A stretch of 5,074 bases of DNA, taken from NCBI GenBank assembly GCA_018985225.1, contig JADGIF010000696.1, forward strand, positions 1 to 5,074. Reading direction: 5' to 3'. Made by a program: the position numbers and the translations under genes. Origin of the DNA: Amoeboradix gromovi X-113 (Eukaryota; Fungi; Sanchytriomycota). The notes under the pieces were generated by a model. It was not told where the DNA came from. It saw only the letters and a list, made by a program, of their open reading frames with translations, and ran no database searches. Of the stretch, positions 350 to 5,006 are shown piece after piece (position 1 is the stretch's first letter; each line of letters starts with the position of its first letter).

Positions 350-574
350 ATGGAGGAGTGGAATCAAAAAGATTTTGAAGATCACGTTCACAATGTGGAG
401 TTTAATAACAGAAGAAACAGAATACACAAAGATATGATTAGAAATATTGAGTATGAAGACGATATGCAGCATGGCTTCAATACTGGATTTGAACATGGAA
501 TTAGATCTGGGAGAGCCATTGGGTCGCAAATGGCAAAAGTTGCATTGAATCTACGAAAGAATAGTCAATCATAG
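350..574 (+). CDS. Small Yae1/Lto1-like (GxxxG-repeat, Yae1_N-type) protein; 3' end uncertain
   Basis: MQHGFNTGFEHGIRSGRAIG has five Gly at 4-residue spacing and resembles yeast Yae1 LQEGFNDGFPTGAKLGKQVG. It is preceded by an acidic, Trp-containing N-terminus. The upstream GYxDG half of the motif is not evident, and 74 aa is short for the family. Confidence 0.5.
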   Translation: MEEWNQKDFEDHVHNVEFNNRRNRIHKDMIRNIEYEDDMQHGFNTGFEHGIRSGRAIGSQMAKVALNLRKNSQS

Positions 575-740
575 TCACTGAAATTTTGTTCCCAACTTCG
601 CTAGGAAAAAATCAGATACTTACTTGGGTTTTACGCTCATTTGGGACTTTGTGAAAATGAGTCTAAATTGATGATGCTCTTGCAAGTCTCATAATTAGTC
701 TCTGTTTTGCTTTCTTCCGGACAAGTTCTTAAACTTTTAG

Positions 741-1825
741 ATGCCTACTTTATGTGAATTCGAGAAAACTGATAATTTTTTGCTAAATTGAATTAAATAA
801 AACTACTTACTCAAACACATATTTGCAGTGTTAACACGCTCTAATATTTTAATTCCTTTACTTGACGCTTCTGTTCTATCACTGCTAGGATGTTTGGAAA
901 ACTGGTACTCGCCACACAATTTTGGTGCATCTAATTATTATGGCCTTTTTAGGGTTTGAGATACCGTTTTTGTCAGTTTCTTTAAATTTGGTATACAATA
1001 GAGTCCATGAACTGTCTTGCTGGGTGCCAAATTTTATCCCGAAAATTTACTGAAGCCTCTAGCATTGATCTAATATCATTTACTCTTGGCTTCCAGGCAT
1101 AAAAATGGTATTATTCCAATCCTATTGGATAATTAACTACTTCTCTCGTCAGCAACAACATTGGATATTTATCATTTTTGTATTCTTATCTTGACACGAC
1201 CCATGCACTCATTGGGGAAGATCTGCTAAAAATAGCTCCGTATGTTCTATAGTATCTGAAGCAGATGAAGTCATAACAGAGGCTTAAAGACCTTCAGTTT
1301 CACTTCGAATACCAGGTGCAGGCCGGAGCAAATAGTGTTAAAAGGTAGTTACCGAGACCTACAGTGTCAACTTAAAATGCAGACAGAGTAATTAGATAAT
1401 ATTGCTATTAGTTTACTTAAAGATCATGTTATCAGTCTAGATTCTGACTATTAATTATGTCTTGAAAAGCATGGCTGTACTCCACCGGAAAATCTCGCAA
1501 AATTCTGTCCAATGTGGTTAATATCAGCACTTGAACTCTCATCGTTCTCGGTTGACTTAATTTTGAAATGCTGGCATTTATCATAGAAATAGTGCTAATT
1601 TTTGACATTGCGTATCCTATTTCCCCAAACTACTATCTCTTGCTACTTTAGAGCTAGCGATCTAAATTTGTAACCAATGTCTAGTTCTAAAATAAATGGG
1701 GATGTCTAATCGTTTTTATTTGCACGTAATATATAGAAAACCTAATTTTCGGAAAAGCTGTAATAGTTGATCAAAAGATTGCGTCAACAGCAGAAACATT
1801 ATATGATTTTGAAGACACTAGTTGA
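741..1825. other. Unresolved region: possible decayed or multi-exon gene, or long intergenic spacer
   Basis: Several stop-free segments of 30-58 codons in changing frames (+801-956, +986-1099, +1133-1249, +1455-1583, +1730-1822; minus-strand ATG ORF 1608-1432, 58 aa). No family recognised. Confidence 0.2.
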
Positions 1826-1841
1826 CCGTCTACTTTAATTT

Positions 1842-1855
1842 AGCATGTTTATTCA
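1842..1855 (-). terminator. Putative polyadenylation/3'-end element TGAATAAACATGCT immediately after the MICAL-like stop
   Basis: AATAAA at 1853-1848 on the minus strand, 3 nt after the TAA. The 14-mer is 13/14 identical to the element downstream of the PfkB gene. Confidence 0.5.
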
Positions 1856-1856
1856 G

Positions 1857-3476
1857 TTACTTCCACTTCAAACCCAGTGCAGATCTGACTCGTTCCGGAA
1901 GTGAGGGTGATTCACAATTTACGACATCAAACATGTGGATATCTACATATAATGAATGAGCATACCTAGTAATAGGATCGGCGGTCCACACAGCTGAGTT
2001 GGAGCTCTGCAAGGATCCTTCACATATCGTCTTCCAATCCATTACTTTCCAACTAGCATTCCTTTCTTTCTGCACTATATCCAAATCGCGATAAACAGCC
2101 CACAATTGGGAGCAATATACTGCATCCAAAGTAGACTGAAACCCTCTATTTATTCCCAGTCCTTGTGGCCAGAATGGGTTTTGTAATGCATCCCCAATCG
2201 GAAATATCAGCGATTTGTTATTTTTATGTTCCAATATGGACATTTGATTAACACAAACACCTTTGCAAGAGAAGTCAAATATCTGTATTCCATGTTTACT
2301 ACTGAACTCACAACTCGAAGGCACCTTGCCAGCGTTAGCGATGTCCCTTCCAAATGCTTTTAATTTATCAACGTTTACATTGCATGGTTCTAAACAGTCT
2401 CTGATGGTAGGAAGCACACTATCAAATATACCATAGTTAATAAATGTTTGCTTTTTAACTGTTGCAACAAAGAAATGGTTATTAAAACCTCGCATATATT
2501 CCAAGTTTTCCAAGTCAATACCCAAATCCATTAGTATCCCCAATGGTCCATCTCTCCAGTCTGCAGCAGCCTTTGTCACAACATATTCCTGTAATTTCTT
2601 TTCTTCTGGTGTGTTATTGAATTGAAAGTTACAGATCACTCCAATTGATTCACCAAATTTACTAATTTTGCGATCATACCCTAAATTGCGGATGAGTTTT
2701 GAAGATTCACCTTCAGCTACCATTAATATATCAAACGGAATGCTTTTGTAATCACTATGTTGTCGCAAAATGGCACCGTCAGAAGAAATTGCTGTCTCGT
2801 AGTAATCTACTTTATTTTTGCGCTGCAGCTGTTCAACATTAGATTCACCAGGTTGGATAGACATTTCTTCCTGCTTTACAACTACCTTGAGATGCTTTCT
2901 AGCTTCCTGGGAAGGCAAAGTCCAGATATGAAACAAATTGTCCTTTGTGTACTCGGCATCTATTACGCCACATACACCCGTGTTGTAGATAAAATTTACA
3001 TTGAACAAGAGTGCTGTCTTCAATAAACACATTTGTATCTGGTTTATACCCAAATGTAAATGCCCATGCGGCTGAAAACTAGGAAAATAGTGACGAAGGC
3101 CAAAAGAAGTGAGGTCATTTATAGTGCATCTCCATGTTTTTATGACATTATGTCTACTAAATGTATCTCTTAACTCAACACAAGTGACATTGAATCCGAT
3201 CATTGCAGACTGAACTGCGGCTCTTAAACCGCAGGGACCGCAGCCCGATATCACTAGTTTCTTGTTATAAACCACTTCTTTATTTTGGGACCTGATGTTG
3301 TCCAAGGTTGTAAATAGACTTGACTGACGAAATGATAAGAATGGTAATATTTCGGTTTTGAGCGAGTGATACGTAGCTGACTTGGTGTTTTTAACTAATT
3401 CCTGATATGTTGACAAGGTATCAGACACATCAGAGGCTTCTAAAAAATCTTGGAACAGTGACTTGAAGTCCACCAT
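1857..3476 (-). CDS. MICAL: Stand-alone MICAL-family FAD-dependent monooxygenase ([F-actin]-monooxygenase-like catalytic domain only), ~539 aa, no intron needed
   Basis: Colinear match, from memory, to the MICAL MO domain along its length: N-terminal helical bundle (LFQDFLEA..TLSTYQEL..YHSLK..SLFTTLD), Rossmann VISGCGPCGLRAAV, ELRDTFSRHNV..W, GIDLENLEY..HFFVATVKKQ, IFDFS, GDALQNPFWPQGLGINRGF (MICAL GDxLxEPFWPxGTGxARGF) and terminal DPITRY (MICAL DPxTRY). The ORF track starts at a GTG (3581). I place the start at ATG 3476 (MVDFKSLF), where homology begins; ATG 3497 is an alternative. Stop is TAA at 1857-1859. Confidence 0.9.
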   Translation of the reverse strand: MVDFKSLFQDFLEASDVSDTLSTYQELVKNTKSATYHSLKTEILPFLSFRQSSLFTTLDNIRSQNKEVVYNKKLVISGCGPCGLRAAVQSAMIGFNVTCVELRDTFSRHNVIKTWRCTINDLTSFGLRHYFPSFQPHGHLHLGINQIQMCLLKTALLFNVNFIYNTGVCGVIDAEYTKDNLFHIWTLPSQEARKHLKVVVKQEEMSIQPGESNVEQLQRKNKVDYYETAISSDGAILRQHSDYKSIPFDILMVAEGESSKLIRNLGYDRKISKFGESIGVICNFQFNNTPEEKKLQEYVVTKAAADWRDGPLGILMDLGIDLENLEYMRGFNNHFFVATVKKQTFINYGIFDSVLPTIRDCLEPCNVNVDKLKAFGRDIANAGKVPSSCEFSSKHGIQIFDFSCKGVCVNQMSILEHKNNKSLIFPIGDALQNPFWPQGLGINRGFQSTLDAVYCSQLWAVYRDLDIVQKERNASWKVMDWKTICEGSLQSSNSAVWTADPITRYAHSLYVDIHMFDVVNCESPSLPERVRSALGLKWK

Positions 3477-3941
3477 ATGAAATTGAAGGAGAACCATACC
3501 AAAGTTTAAAACTCTAAAGCAGCTATTGAATTGAAATAAAGCATAAGTGATGATAACATGAATTTTATCGTTTTTATACACTTCATTTCCAACTTCTTAA
3601 CAACGAGATACTCTTTCTTTTCCCATCCATGGCGGTTGCTCCAAATCAGCTAGAATATACTGAGTCTAAAGACATCTCCAAGCGATATAGAACACTATAT
3701 ATTCAAAAACCAGTTTAAAAATTAAATTATCGTTTGAAACAAATGTAAAGTCTGAGTTAAATGTATTGTGGCATAACCAGTGATTGTGGAATTTAACTCG
3801 AAGTTTGTGTGTCCGTCTTTAATCCCGTAAATAGGTGGAGGTGGCGTGCCCAGCAACTGTTACCGATCGACTAGTTTAGTCAGCTTCTCAATAGAAATTC
3901 TTGATTTTCTGGAAAACGAGGACATTAGCAAGGTATCTATG

Positions 3942-4013: not shown

Positions 4014-5006
4014 TCAAAATAAGAACGGAAGCATTCGCTTTACTTCAAGTTCTTTTTCTTTGTATATTTCAAGTCTTTCTTCCATTGTTGAATTGTTAAA
4101 CAATCCATTATCATAGCTAAAGGGTCCAAACTGTTCCAGAGTTAGTCCTGCAGCAATACTTCCCATTCTGCATCCATTTACTATACTTTCAAAGCTATTA
4201 TCATGAACAGACAAATAAGCGGTCAACGCGCCTAGAAAAGTGTTTCCACAACCAGTAGAGTCAACTATTTCAGCATCGTCAACACCTATAAGCAGCCTGC
4301 TCGTGTAATAAGGTGGAATATATGCAATTTTACCATGAAAATTAACTAAAGACCCATAATATGAACATCTTAGCACAATAATAGCACTACCTATAGATAT
4401 TAGTTTGGATACTTCAATAAAATACGACATGGTGTCTGCTATTGAATCATAGGATGGCATTTTATGTTTAATTAGTTCCAAGGCTTCAATGTGATTCGGA
4501 GATGTAATGAATACGCTTGAAGTGCAATATTTCCAGTTATTCCATAGCTCAGATGCATTTTTCAGGTCATCAGGGTTAGGCTCCCAAACGATAAATCTGT
4601 TAGGCCATTCTTCAGCCAGAGGTTTTATTCTCTTCCAACCAAGCACACCATGAACATGAGTTATAGGCCATTCAGTGGGAACATCAAAACAACTAGTACG
4701 AAAGTGATGATAATCTTCAAACTCAGTCACTAATTCAAATGTCAGATGATTATTTTTAAGTGTTATTAAAGCACGTGGGGTTTTGAATGGCTTTAGCACC
4801 TCTAGAAGTGTAATCCCTAAACCTCGCAATGGAGTTGGATCAAAATCGTCACCATACTTTGCGACATATCCCACCCTGTCTGTAACTGCTTTCATCCCGT
4901 AGGTTGCATATAACCCTCCACCCCCTAATAATTTTGTATAGGTGCGCTCTTTTAGATTCATGTCGTCGTAAATAATTCTAGAAATGGATAAACAACATGG
5001 TTTCAT
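4014..5006 (-). CDS. PfkB/ribokinase-fold protein, fungal Mak32-like subfamily (probable atypical or pseudo-kinase), 330 aa
   Basis: N-terminal IIYDDM..LGGGGLYATYG (PfkB GG motif), GDDF, IVWEPNP, SPNHIEA (NxxE), VLRCSYYG, IPPYY and C-terminal signature VDSTGCGNTFLGAL. The WEP motif and the GxGN variant are what I recall from fungal Mak32-like proteins. The frame stays open upstream to the window edge with no further ATG, but the first conserved strand directly follows ATG 5006. Stop is TGA at 4014-4016. Confidence 0.85.
   Translation of the reverse strand: MKPCCLSISRIIYDDMNLKERTYTKLLGGGGLYATYGMKAVTDRVGYVAKYGDDFDPTPLRGLGITLLEVLKPFKTPRALITLKNNHLTFELVTEFEDYHHFRTSCFDVPTEWPITHVHGVLGWKRIKPLAEEWPNRFIVWEPNPDDLKNASELWNNWKYCTSSVFITSPNHIEALELIKHKMPSYDSIADTMSYFIEVSKLISIGSAIIVLRCSYYGSLVNFHGKIAYIPPYYTSRLLIGVDDAEIVDSTGCGNTFLGALTAYLSVHDNSFESIVNGCRMGSIAAGLTLEQFGPFSYDNGLFNNSTMEERLEIYKEKELEVKRMLPFLF

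What the first reader, a model, noticed from the sequence alone, without database searches (positions are those of the whole stretch)
1857..3476. Stand-alone MICAL monooxygenase in a fungus-like genome: candidate minimal actin-redox system outside animals
Seen: a full MICAL catalytic domain, including the N-terminal helical bundle and the FWP motif whose Trp stacks on the flavin in MICALs, ends 34 residues after DPxTRY. No CH, LIM or coiled-coil/bMERB domain follows. Even if the GTAACT overlapping the stop were a splice donor, the nearest acceptors (1830, 1818) add at most ~9 residues before a stop. Established: animal MICALs oxidise actin Met44/Met47 to disassemble F-actin, the oxidation is reversed by MsrB/SelR, MICAL1 is autoinhibited by its C-terminal region, and budding and fission yeast lack MICAL. 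Inference: the Mak32-like and Yae1-like neighbours point to a fungal-lineage host. This could be an ancestral or reduced enzyme with no autoinhibitory module, acting on actin in amoeboid or zoosporic cells, on host actin in a parasite, or as an NADPH oxidase/H2O2 source. I cannot confirm that it is undescribed.
Basis: partly seen in the sequence, partly recalled or inferred. Interest (0 to 1): 0.8.

Follow-up and report, generated by a model that had tools for sequence, protein, structure and literature searches.

The report
Stand-alone MICAL-like flavin enzyme in a fungus
An amoeboid, alga-parasitising early fungus carries an intact gene for just the catalytic part of MICAL, the animal enzyme that dismantles actin filaments by oxidising them. 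It belongs to an old, unstudied sister branch found in swimming-spore fungi and many protists, not to the animal MICAL line, so its target is unproven.

Summary
Window 1857-3476 (-) is an intact, intronless, single-copy 539-aa gene with a full MICAL-type monooxygenase domain and nothing else. PDB sequence hits are MICAL3 and MICAL1 (E 9e-49 to 5.5e-45); the next hit has E 0.008. The AF2 model (pLDDT 93) matches only MICAL structures strongly. The stop is real: homologues end at the same conserved tail, AATAAA follows it, and no intron of this genome's 19-20-nt format fits.

The host is a fungus, probably the sanchytrid Amoeboradix gromovi. The enzyme is not a reduced or unique MICAL. It belongs to a conserved stand-alone subfamily seen in about 35 named chytrid and aphelid species and in haptophyte, alveolate, stramenopile, rhizarian, cryptist and provoran protists. 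This subfamily has a ~50-aa insertion and near-neutral charge, and it sits across a fully supported branch from canonical MICALs. Monophyly of the opisthokont sequences is rejected (AU p 4e-42).

Flavin chemistry is conserved. Actin as substrate is plausible (about 35%) but untested. Actin Met44/47 and MsrB are present but are not specific evidence.

Databases auto-name the chytrid copies 'mical3'. I found no paper on them, and the published view places MICAL's origin at the metazoan stem.

The parts
1857..3476 (-). Complete coding sequence (539 codons plus TAA) of the stand-alone MICAL-type monooxygenase. An alternative upstream ATG at 3497 is used by the public model.
   Evidence: Single copy in the genome. 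GC 0.388 and GC3 0.375 lie within the range of other genes of this genome.
3288..3467 (-). N-terminal four-helix bundle (residues 4-63), a MICAL-specific extension.
   Evidence: AF2 helices 4-13, 17-29, 36-46 and 49-63. Aligned to MICAL1/3 from residue 7-8.
3228..3245 (-). GxGxxG dinucleotide-binding motif GCGPCG (residues 78-83).
   Evidence: G78, G80 and G83 are invariant across 11 diverse family members, and all three plus P81 are at least 85% conserved in both clades.
3147..3170 (-). R103...R108-H-N110 motif, equivalent to R116/R121/N123 of mouse MICAL1.
   Evidence: Invariant in all 56 aligned sequences. Aligned to MICAL1.
2754..2903 (-). Subfamily-specific ~50-residue insertion (residues 192-241) with an EL...KVDF.E.A.S.DGA motif.
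   Evidence: Absent (more than 90% gaps) in all canonical MICAL-clade sequences and present in fungal and protist stand-alone forms. Model pLDDT is 66-80 here.
2334..2648 (-). Pfam Rossman_Mical region (residues 277-381).
2139..2195 (-). GD...P-F-W-P...G.G..RGF block (residues 428-446). W436 is equivalent to the flavin-stacking Trp400 of mouse MICAL1.
   Evidence: G428, D429, P434, W436, G439, G441 and G445 are invariant in 56 sequences. Aligned.
1962..1979 (-). DPITRY (residues 500-505), the end of the catalytic domain.
   Evidence: R504 is invariant; D500, P501 and Y505 are at least 90% conserved.
1860..1961 (-). Conserved C-terminal tail (residues 506-539, two helices, ...LP.R.R...GLK) that ends the protein.
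   Evidence: Homologues P0002, P0003 and P0010 end at the same position with the same motif. Model helices 507-519 and 528-533 have pLDDT 94-97.
1848..1853 (-). AATAAA, 3 nt after the stop codon; possible polyadenylation signal.
   Evidence: Read directly from the sequence. The function is inferred.

Best explanation
This is an intact, intronless, single-copy gene for a cytosolic, stand-alone FAD/NADPH monooxygenase of the MICAL superfamily. It belongs to an ancient, uncharacterised sister subfamily, not to the canonical MICAL clade of animals. That subfamily is 500-680 aa long, carries a ~50-aa insertion and a conserved short C-terminal tail, and has no CH/LIM/bMERB domains.

Inferred mechanism, by homology with the MICAL1 catalytic domain: NADPH reduces the FAD. 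The isoalloxazine, stacked on Trp436 when oxidised, swings in. The flavin hydroperoxide then either oxygenates a substrate, most likely a protein methionine, or decays to H2O2. With no autoinhibitory C-terminal region, activity would be constitutive or controlled by expression or by a partner in trans.

The substrate is not shown. The F-actin D-loop (Met44/Met47, both kept in this organism's actin) is the leading single candidate, at about 35%, which fits the crawling, filopodia-bearing zoospores of sanchytrids. A non-actin substrate is about as likely.
For: Family: sequence and fold match MICAL and nothing else at that level.

Core: 55 positions are at least 85% conserved with the same residue in both clades, including GxGxxG, R103/R108/N110, GD, P434/W436/P437 of the FWP motif, RGF and DPxTRY.

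Real end: homologues stop at the same tail. AATAAA follows the stop. No 18-25-nt GT...TAAC...AG intron lies on this strand, whereas MsrB and actin of this genome have 19- and 20-nt introns of that form.

Subfamily: the bipartition has 100% local support in three trees. The AU test rejects opisthokont monophyly, p 3.6e-42. Named members are chytrids, an aphelid, Palpitomonas, Hondaea, Diacronema, Amoebophrya, Ancoracysta and Leptophrys.

Context: actin has HQGIMVGMGQKD. MsrB is present. Sanchytrid zoospores crawl with filopodia and a lamellipodium (PMC8371127). Among named fungi, only zoosporic lineages were hit.
Against: Monooxygenase domains of this subfamily are near neutral (median pI 6.9; window 7.2, net charge +0.6). 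Canonical MICAL-clade domains are basic (median pI 8.7, +7).

No member of the subfamily that I scanned carries a cytoskeletal domain, and two carry an N-terminal alpha/beta-hydrolase.

Tyr293 of MICAL1 is Phe335 here and throughout the subfamily.

Met44/47 and MsrB are near-universal, so their presence is not specific.

The trees are unrooted and the AU group was chosen after the tree had been seen.
Confidence: 0.8

Rival explanations
1. One reading: a true minimal MICAL-actin-MsrB redox system. The enzyme oxidises actin Met44/Met47 to disassemble F-actin in amoeboid zoospores, and MsrB reverses it.
For: The catalytic core is shared with MICAL. The actin D-loop methionines are kept. MsrB is present. 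The host has an amoeboid life style. Among named fungi the gene was found only in zoosporic lineages.
Against: It sits in a separate subfamily from every enzyme shown to act on actin. It lacks the basic charge of canonical MICAL domains. No actin-linked domain occurs in any subfamily member scanned. The predicted-complex test gave no answer, which counts neither way.
Confidence: 0.35
2. It oxygenates a different substrate: another protein's methionine, or a small molecule or lipid. The resemblance to MICAL would then be only that of a shared catalytic scaffold.
For: It is a sister subfamily with its own conserved insertion and tail. Charge is neutral. P0230 and P0286 carry alpha/beta-hydrolase fusions. 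Four positions are conserved differently in the two clades: E326, F335, P426 and Q447.
Against: The open MICAL-type fold, the N-terminal bundle and the flavin-gating Trp are all kept. No metabolic gene cluster or pathway context lies around it.
Confidence: 0.35
3. It acts mainly as an NADPH oxidase and makes H2O2 as a local signal or weapon, without a specific oxygenated substrate.
For: Isolated MICAL catalytic domains have basal NADPH oxidase activity (established knowledge of MICAL1). There is no regulatory domain here.
Against: Wide conservation of a large surface insertion and a C-terminal tail suggests specific partner or substrate contacts. An unregulated cytosolic H2O2 source would be costly (inference).
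Confidence: 0.12
4. Artefact: a contaminant contig in a single-cell assembly, or a truncated or mis-assembled gene.
For: The contig is only 5 kb and carries no mini-intron to tie it to this genome. The protein nests among chytrid sequences rather than outside them.
Against: GC and GC3 match other genes of the genome. A 410-nt segment downstream has a diverged copy on another contig of the same genome. The gene is internal to the contig, with 1.8 kb downstream. Its length and ends match about 80 homologues.
Confidence: 0.03

Closest known systems
Catalytic (monooxygenase) domain of animal MICAL1/2/3 (e.g. mouse MICAL1 2BRY/2BRA, human MICAL3 6ICI)
   Same: N-terminal four-helix bundle and two-domain class-A flavoprotein fold. 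GxGxxG, R/N motif, GD, FWP with the flavin-stacking Trp, RGF and DPxTRY are all present. Identity is 27-30% over the whole domain.
   Different: No CH, LIM or bMERB domains. A ~50-aa insertion at residues 192-241. Phe replaces Tyr293. Charge is near neutral instead of basic. It lies on the other side of a fully supported branch.
Chytrid and aphelid proteins auto-named '[F-actin]-monooxygenase mical3' (Rhizophlyctis, Podochytrium, Boothiomyces, Geranomyces and others; Amoeboaphelidium)
   Same: Same subfamily, same stand-alone architecture, insertion and C-terminal tail. Identity is 35-44% for the named species; the closest relative is an unnamed metagenomic sequence at 58%.
   Different: The window's copy is from a different phylum (probably Sanchytriomycota). 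None of these proteins has been studied experimentally, as far as I could find.
Non-animal members of the canonical clade: Salpingoeca infusionum PH-domain protein, Aphanomyces EF-hand protein, Balamuthia 'mical3'
   Same: MICAL-type monooxygenase outside animals.
   Different: Those lack the insertion, are basic, carry the catalytic domain at the C-terminus of 800-1,500-aa proteins, and group with animal MICALs.
p-Hydroxybenzoate hydroxylase-type class A flavoprotein monooxygenases
   Same: General FAD-binding fold and GD/GxGxxG fingerprints.
   Different: Only distant: Foldseek E about 1e-10 to 1e-12, TM about 0.4, 10-13% identity. They have no N-terminal bundle.

Membership tests
MICAL superfamily (catalytic monooxygenase domain) | Sequence match to the MICAL-specific domain above the curated threshold, with no comparable match to other flavoenzymes | tested here: met
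   PF25413 40.6 bits against cut-off 27. PDB hits MICAL3/1 at E 9e-49 to 5.5e-45, next hit 0.0078.
MICAL superfamily (catalytic monooxygenase domain) | MICAL fold, including the N-terminal helical bundle | tested here: met
   Model pLDDT 93. Top 10 Foldseek hits are all MICAL, TM by target 0.84-0.85 for the monooxygenase-only crystal structures (2bry/2bra/2c4c). The next fold has TM about 0.4.
MICAL superfamily (catalytic monooxygenase domain) | FAD fingerprints (GxGxxG, GD) and the flavin-stacking Trp of the FWP motif | tested here: met
   GCGPCG 78-83, GD 428-429, FWP 435-437. G78, G80, G83, G428, D429 and W436 are invariant across 11 diverse family members; G428, D429 and W436 also across 56 sequences.
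Canonical MICAL family (MICAL1-3 / Drosophila Mical) | CH domain after the monooxygenase domain | tested here: not met
   No CH on the contig. CH domains are found only in other genes on other contigs.
Canonical MICAL family (MICAL1-3 / Drosophila Mical) | LIM domain | tested here: not met
   20 LIM matches in the genome, none on contig C984.
Canonical MICAL family (MICAL1-3 / Drosophila Mical) | C-terminal bMERB / autoinhibitory coiled-coil | tested here: not met
   The protein ends 34 residues after DPITRY. PF12130 has no match in the genome, though that search had no positive control.
Canonical MICAL family (MICAL1-3 / Drosophila Mical) | Phylogenetic placement inside the clade that holds animal MICALs | tested here: not met
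   It falls in the insertion-bearing clade across a branch with 100% local support. Opisthokont monophyly is rejected, p-AU 3.6e-42. The trees are unrooted.
Canonical MICAL family (MICAL1-3 / Drosophila Mical) | F-actin-stimulated NADPH oxidation and stereospecific oxidation of actin Met44/Met47 | not testable with these tools
   Only indirect evidence: actin keeps Met44/47. The complex prediction gave no answer.
Canonical MICAL family (MICAL1-3 / Drosophila Mical) | Basic catalytic domain (positive surface facing acidic actin) | tested here: not met
   Whole-domain pI is 7.2 with net charge +0.6. The canonical clade has median pI 8.7 and +7. This is a crude whole-domain measure, not a surface map.
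Stand-alone insertion-bearing MICAL-like subfamily (defined here) | 500-680 aa, ~50-aa insertion with the KVDF.E...DGA motif, tail ...LP.R.R..GLK, no further domains | tested here: met
   Insertion at 192-241 and tail at 506-539 align with fungal and protist members. One-stretch profile match.

The most novel reading that the evidence does not exclude
The stand-alone, insertion-bearing MICAL-like enzymes are a pre-opisthokont family of unregulated methionine oxidases for actin or another cytoskeletal protein. They serve wall-less motile cells, were kept in zoosporic fungi and many flagellate or amoeboid protists, and were lost when fungi gave up naked motile stages. Enzymatic redox control of actin would then predate animals by far, and this 539-aa protein would be a minimal, naturally constitutive model of it.
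Probability: 0.3. Interest if true: 0.75.

Novelty: new variant of a known kind. Interest (0 to 1): 0.5.

Why it matters
MICAL is treated as an animal invention. Koch et al. 2012 (PMC3305314) found no MICAL-class protein outside animals and placed its origin at the metazoan stem. Neither the chytrid actin-network survey (bioRxiv 10.1101/2020.06.12.142943) nor the sanchytrid genome paper (PMC8371127) mentions it.

The catalytic domain is in fact widespread. One clade holds animals, a choanoflagellate, an amoebozoan and oomycetes. A second, stand-alone clade holds zoosporic fungi and at least six other protist lineages.

If the stand-alone enzymes oxidise actin, reversible actin methionine oxidation is an ancient eukaryotic mechanism, and a small, unregulated enzyme becomes available for study. 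If they do not, they show what the MICAL scaffold did before it was recruited to actin. Either result is reachable with a simple recombinant assay.

Tried and rejected
1. Splicing past the stop. Acceptors at 1833, 1830 and 1818 would give introns of 28, 31 and 43 nt without a TAAC branch motif. This genome's introns seen here are 19-20 nt of the form GTATTAC...[CT]TAAC..AG. Rejected.

2. Hidden in-frame mini-introns in the ORF. None were found on the minus strand.

3. Complex prediction of the enzyme with exon 1 of the genome's actin gave no answer (median score 0.17, mark 0.34). This is no evidence either way.

No RNA evidence was obtained and read laying was not used.

5. A word search seeded with a trout MICAL3 was swamped by vertebrate MICAL3 and gave no non-animal sequences.

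6. Synteny with the closest relative's contig (L016): none.

7. bMERB search of the genome found nothing, but nothing rang in the controls either, so it is weak.

8. Rfam and tRNA scans of the window found nothing.

9. An outgroup-rooted tree was not attempted. The nearest non-MICAL flavoenzymes are about 10-13% identical, so I make no claim about which form is ancestral.

10. The findings look-up by words failed, and the look-up near this place was empty.

Actin and MsrB are each split by a mini-intron. I used their exons separately by reference and left out the joined proteins.
Full report
**What is there**

The minus strand of the window carries one long open frame (1857-3581). From the ATG at 3476 it encodes 539 residues ending in TAA at 1857-1859. 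The public model of this gene (P0001, 546 aa) starts at an ATG seven codons upstream, at 3497. Alignment with homologues favours neither start strongly.

Pfam gives PF25413 (Rossman_Mical) above its curated cut-off (40.6 against 27 bits, residues 277-381). A phmmer search of all PDB sequences returns only MICAL entries with strong scores: MICAL3 6ici at 9.1e-49, and MICAL1 2bry/8y6k/4txi/2bra at 1.7e-45 to 5.5e-45. These align from residue 7-8 to residue 507. The next hit, a dihydrolipoamide dehydrogenase, has E 0.0078.

An AlphaFold2 model built on 56 homologues has mean pLDDT 93.1 and pTM 0.93. It shows four N-terminal helices (residues 4-63) before the Rossmann strand. Foldseek against PDB puts ten MICAL1/MICAL3 structures first (E 1e-36 to 5e-33). 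TM by target is 0.84-0.85 for the monooxygenase-only crystal structures 2bry, 2bra and 2c4c. Other class A flavoprotein monooxygenases follow at E 4e-12 and TM about 0.4.

- GCGPCG at 78-83.
- R103/R108/N110, which align with R116/R121/N123 of mouse MICAL1.
- GD at 428-429.
- FWP at 435-437, where W436 aligns with the flavin-stacking Trp400.
- DPITRY at 500-505, 34 residues before the end.

R103, R108, N110, G428, D429, P434, W436 and R504 are invariant in the 56-sequence alignment. G78, G80 and G83 are invariant across 11 diverse family members.

**Is the end real?**

Four observations say it is.
- The closest homologues end at the same alignment position with the same motif. P0002 is 58% identical. 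P0003 and the aphelid P0010 are 43-44% identical. The motif is ...LP.R.R...GLK followed by the stop.
- AATAAA lies at 1848-1853, three bases after the stop.
- This genome uses tiny introns. I confirmed a 19-nt intron in its MsrB gene (GTATTACACACTAACATAG) and a 20-nt intron in its actin gene (GTATTACATCATTAACGTAG). Earlier notes of this scan describe this format genome-wide. A donor at the GTAACT overlapping the stop would need acceptors at 1833, 1830 or 1818. That gives introns of 28, 31 or 43 nt, with no branch motif before the AG. A scan for 18-25-nt GT...TAAC...AG segments found none on the minus strand of the whole window.
- The gene lies inside the contig, with 1.8 kb of downstream sequence that has no ORF above 58 aa.

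The protein is therefore truly stand-alone. CH and LIM domains occur in other genes on other contigs. PF12130 (bMERB) has no match in the genome, though that search had no positive control. The enzyme is single-copy.

**Whose genome?**

The assembly has 10,549,678 bases in 1,319 contigs, and the window is about 36% GC. Galindo et al. 2021 (PMC8371127) report 10.5 Mb, 36.27% GC and 1,167 contigs for the decontaminated Amoeboradix gromovi assembly, with ORF-only TransDecoder proteins. The public model's start at the first ATG of the ORF fits that method.

Earlier notes of this scan reached the same identification. I take it as probable (about 0.75-0.85), not proven.

The ORF's GC (0.388) and GC3 (0.375) lie within the range of other genes I fetched from the genome. 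A 410-nt downstream segment has a diverged copy on another contig of the same genome. Both argue against a contaminant.

Sanchytrid zoospores do not swim. They crawl with filopodia and an anterior lamellipodium and drag an immotile pseudocilium.

**Relatives**

A word-indexed search found 83 relatives, and a profile version found 95. The named fungal hits are all zoosporic: about 35 chytrid species from many orders, plus the aphelid Amoeboaphelidium. No Dikarya, Mucoromycota, Zoopagomycota, Blastocladiomycota, Neocallimastigomycota, Rozella or microsporidia appeared, nor did Batrachochytrium or Spizellomyces. For the last groups this is absence in a word-limited search and needs tblastn.

Several chytrid entries are already auto-named '[F-actin]-monooxygenase mical3' in NCBI.

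The exhaustive profile search found 713 cluster representatives at E ≤ 1e-30. They fall into two kinds:
- Proteins of 500-680 aa that match the profile in one stretch.
- Proteins that match in two stretches, because they lack profile positions of about 203-265.

The second kind comprises long animal MICALs with the domain at the N-terminus, and non-animal proteins with the domain at the C-terminus.

**Phylogeny**

Three trees of the catalytic domain show the same bipartition with 100% local support:
- FastTree, 186 rows.
- IQ-TREE LG+C20 PMSF, 70 rows.
- IQ-TREE, 37 named rows.

One side (canonical, no insertion) holds animals (Oscarella, Trichuris, Clonorchis, vertebrates), the choanoflagellate Salpingoeca infusionum, the amoebozoan Balamuthia and the oomycete Aphanomyces.

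The other side (insertion-bearing, almost all stand-alone) holds the fungal sequences with the window. It also holds Palpitomonas (Cryptista), Hondaea (Labyrinthulomycetes), Diacronema (haptophyte), Amoebophrya (Syndiniales), Ancoracysta (Provora) and Leptophrys (Rhizaria).

The window groups with the metagenomic P0002 (SH-aLRT 99) among chytrids, next to Rhizophlyctis.

Forcing all opisthokont sequences together costs 160 log-likelihood units (p-AU 3.6e-42). Two caveats apply: I chose the group after seeing the tree, and long branches are involved. Stramenopiles and opisthokonts sit on both sides.

The fungal enzyme is therefore not a simple vertical orthologue of animal MICAL. An old duplication with differential loss, or transfers, is needed. 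The trees are unrooted, so I make no claim about which form is ancestral.

**What differs from canonical MICAL**

- **Insertion.** It spans residues 192-241, is moderately conserved (EL, KVDF.E, A.S.DGA) and is a lower-confidence surface element in the model.
- **Shared and divergent positions.** Across 186 domains, 55 positions are at least 85% conserved with the same residue in both clades. Four are conserved differently: E326 (E/V), F335 (F versus Tyr293 of MICAL1), P426 (P/L) and Q447 (H/L).
- **Charge.** Canonical-clade domains are basic (median pI 8.7, net +7, 80% above pI 8). Those of the stand-alone clade are near neutral (median 6.9; window 7.2, +0.6). From memory of the MICAL1 structure papers, the active-site face of MICAL is strongly positive. 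The whole-domain figure is only a crude proxy for that.
- **Fusions.** In the stand-alone clade the few fusions I scanned are an N-terminal alpha/beta-hydrolase (P0230, P0286) and a Kre9/KNH domain (P0020), with no cytoskeletal module. Canonical-clade protist proteins carry PH or EF-hand domains.

**How it most likely works**

Shown: the FAD-binding and flavin-gating residues and the MICAL fold are intact.

Inferred by homology: NADPH reduces FAD, the flavin swings from its Trp-stacked position, and a flavin hydroperoxide oxygenates a bound substrate or releases H2O2. Without a bMERB-type region, activity should be constitutive unless controlled by expression or by a partner in trans.

The substrate is open. 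Points for actin:
- The shared protein-sized MICAL scaffold.
- A conventional actin with HQGIMVGMGQKD, so Met44 and Met47 are kept.
- An MsrB gene.
- The crawling life style of the host.
- Restriction of the gene, among named fungi, to lineages with naked motile cells.

Points against actin:
- The separate clade.
- The neutral charge.
- The lack of any actin-linked domain in the subfamily.
- Met44/47 and MsrB are near-universal, so they are not specific evidence.

I put actin at about 35%, another specific substrate at about 35%, mainly H2O2 production at about 12%, and leave the rest open.

A predicted-complex test with actin exon 1 gave no answer and counts neither way. The actin and MsrB genes are interrupted by mini-introns. 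I used single exons by reference and left out the joined proteins.

**Known or new?**

Koch et al. 2012 (PMC3305314) found no MICAL-class protein outside animals and placed its origin at the metazoan stem. Their search was based on LIM domains.

The chytrid actin survey (bioRxiv 10.1101/2020.06.12.142943) and the sanchytrid genome paper have no mention of MICAL. No paper in the library holds both 'MICAL' and 'zoospore'. Searches combining MICAL with chytrids, fungi, protists or named protist genera turned up nothing on a non-animal MICAL-type enzyme. The library lacks many subscription journals, so this is not proof.

Databases already recognise the domain (Pfam PF25413, the UniProt and NCBI names). 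The window's gene is thus a new member of a subfamily that is visible in databases but apparently undescribed and uncharacterised. I rate it a new variant of a known kind.

**Verdict**

Interest is moderate: the result corrects the 'animal-only' picture of the MICAL enzyme and offers a simple test of whether enzymatic actin oxidation is ancient. The key functional claim has no direct support, and the family is already auto-annotated.

Noticed in passing
window 894-1305: A ~410-nt segment downstream of the gene has a diverged copy (74% by BLAST, 84% mean column identity in the MAFFT alignment) at G000:C778:239-677. Its indels of 16, 7 and 4 nt are not multiples of three, neither copy has a shared ORF, and there is no Rfam match. 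It is either a non-coding repeat or an unknown RNA gene.
   Followed up: partly
window 575-1856: A 1.28-kb stretch between the Yae1-like ORF and the monooxygenase stop has no ORF above 58 aa. That is long for a gene-free interval in a 10.5-Mb genome.
   Followed up: partly
window 4014-5006 (-): A 330-aa ORF with only weak pfkB/ribokinase matches (Pfam E 0.0012, TIGR02152 E 4e-6, both below cut-off).
   Followed up: partly
window 350-574 (+): A 74-aa ORF with a sub-threshold Yae1_N match (E 0.012). A 20-nt GT...AG segment at 395-414 lies inside it, and it is unclear whether that is an intron.
   Followed up: no
L002 2043-3185 (-) = G000:C826, next to MsrB: Two adjacent ORFs with Cas12f1-like TNB (E 3e-10) and OrfB_IS605 (E 9e-4) matches, suggesting a TnpB/Fanzor-like transposon nuclease gene. 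A long ORF (260 aa) in the overlapping locus L003, about where these ORFs lie, has an unusually high GC3 (0.63).
   Followed up: partly
L002 1684-1702 (-) and L012 1482-1501 (-): Mini-introns of 19 nt (MsrB) and 20 nt (actin). Both start GTATTAC and end [CT]TAAC plus 2 nt plus AG, confirming the format described in earlier notes on this genome.
   Followed up: yes
P0230, P0286 (MMETSP / unknown protists): Members of the stand-alone clade fused to an N-terminal alpha/beta-hydrolase domain. This could be a hint to a non-cytoskeletal role for part of the subfamily.
   Followed up: partly
P0220 (Salpingoeca infusionum), P0306 (Aphanomyces), P0239 (Balamuthia): Canonical-clade MICAL-type domains sit at the C-terminus of PH-domain, EF-hand or otherwise unannotated proteins in non-animals. 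These architectures differ from the animal MO-CH-LIM-bMERB order.
   Followed up: partly
P0281, P0318, P0319 (Clonorchis/Opisthorchis MICALs): These trematode MICALs sit inside the animal clade. Yet they match the profile in one stretch through the insertion region, which suggests an independent insertion at the same site.
   Followed up: no
L016 (ENA ERZ27314334 k141_507975): The closest relative (58% identity) lies on a gene-dense 29-kb metagenomic contig of 35% GC with no synteny to the window. It may come from an unsampled sanchytrid-like fungus.
   Followed up: partly
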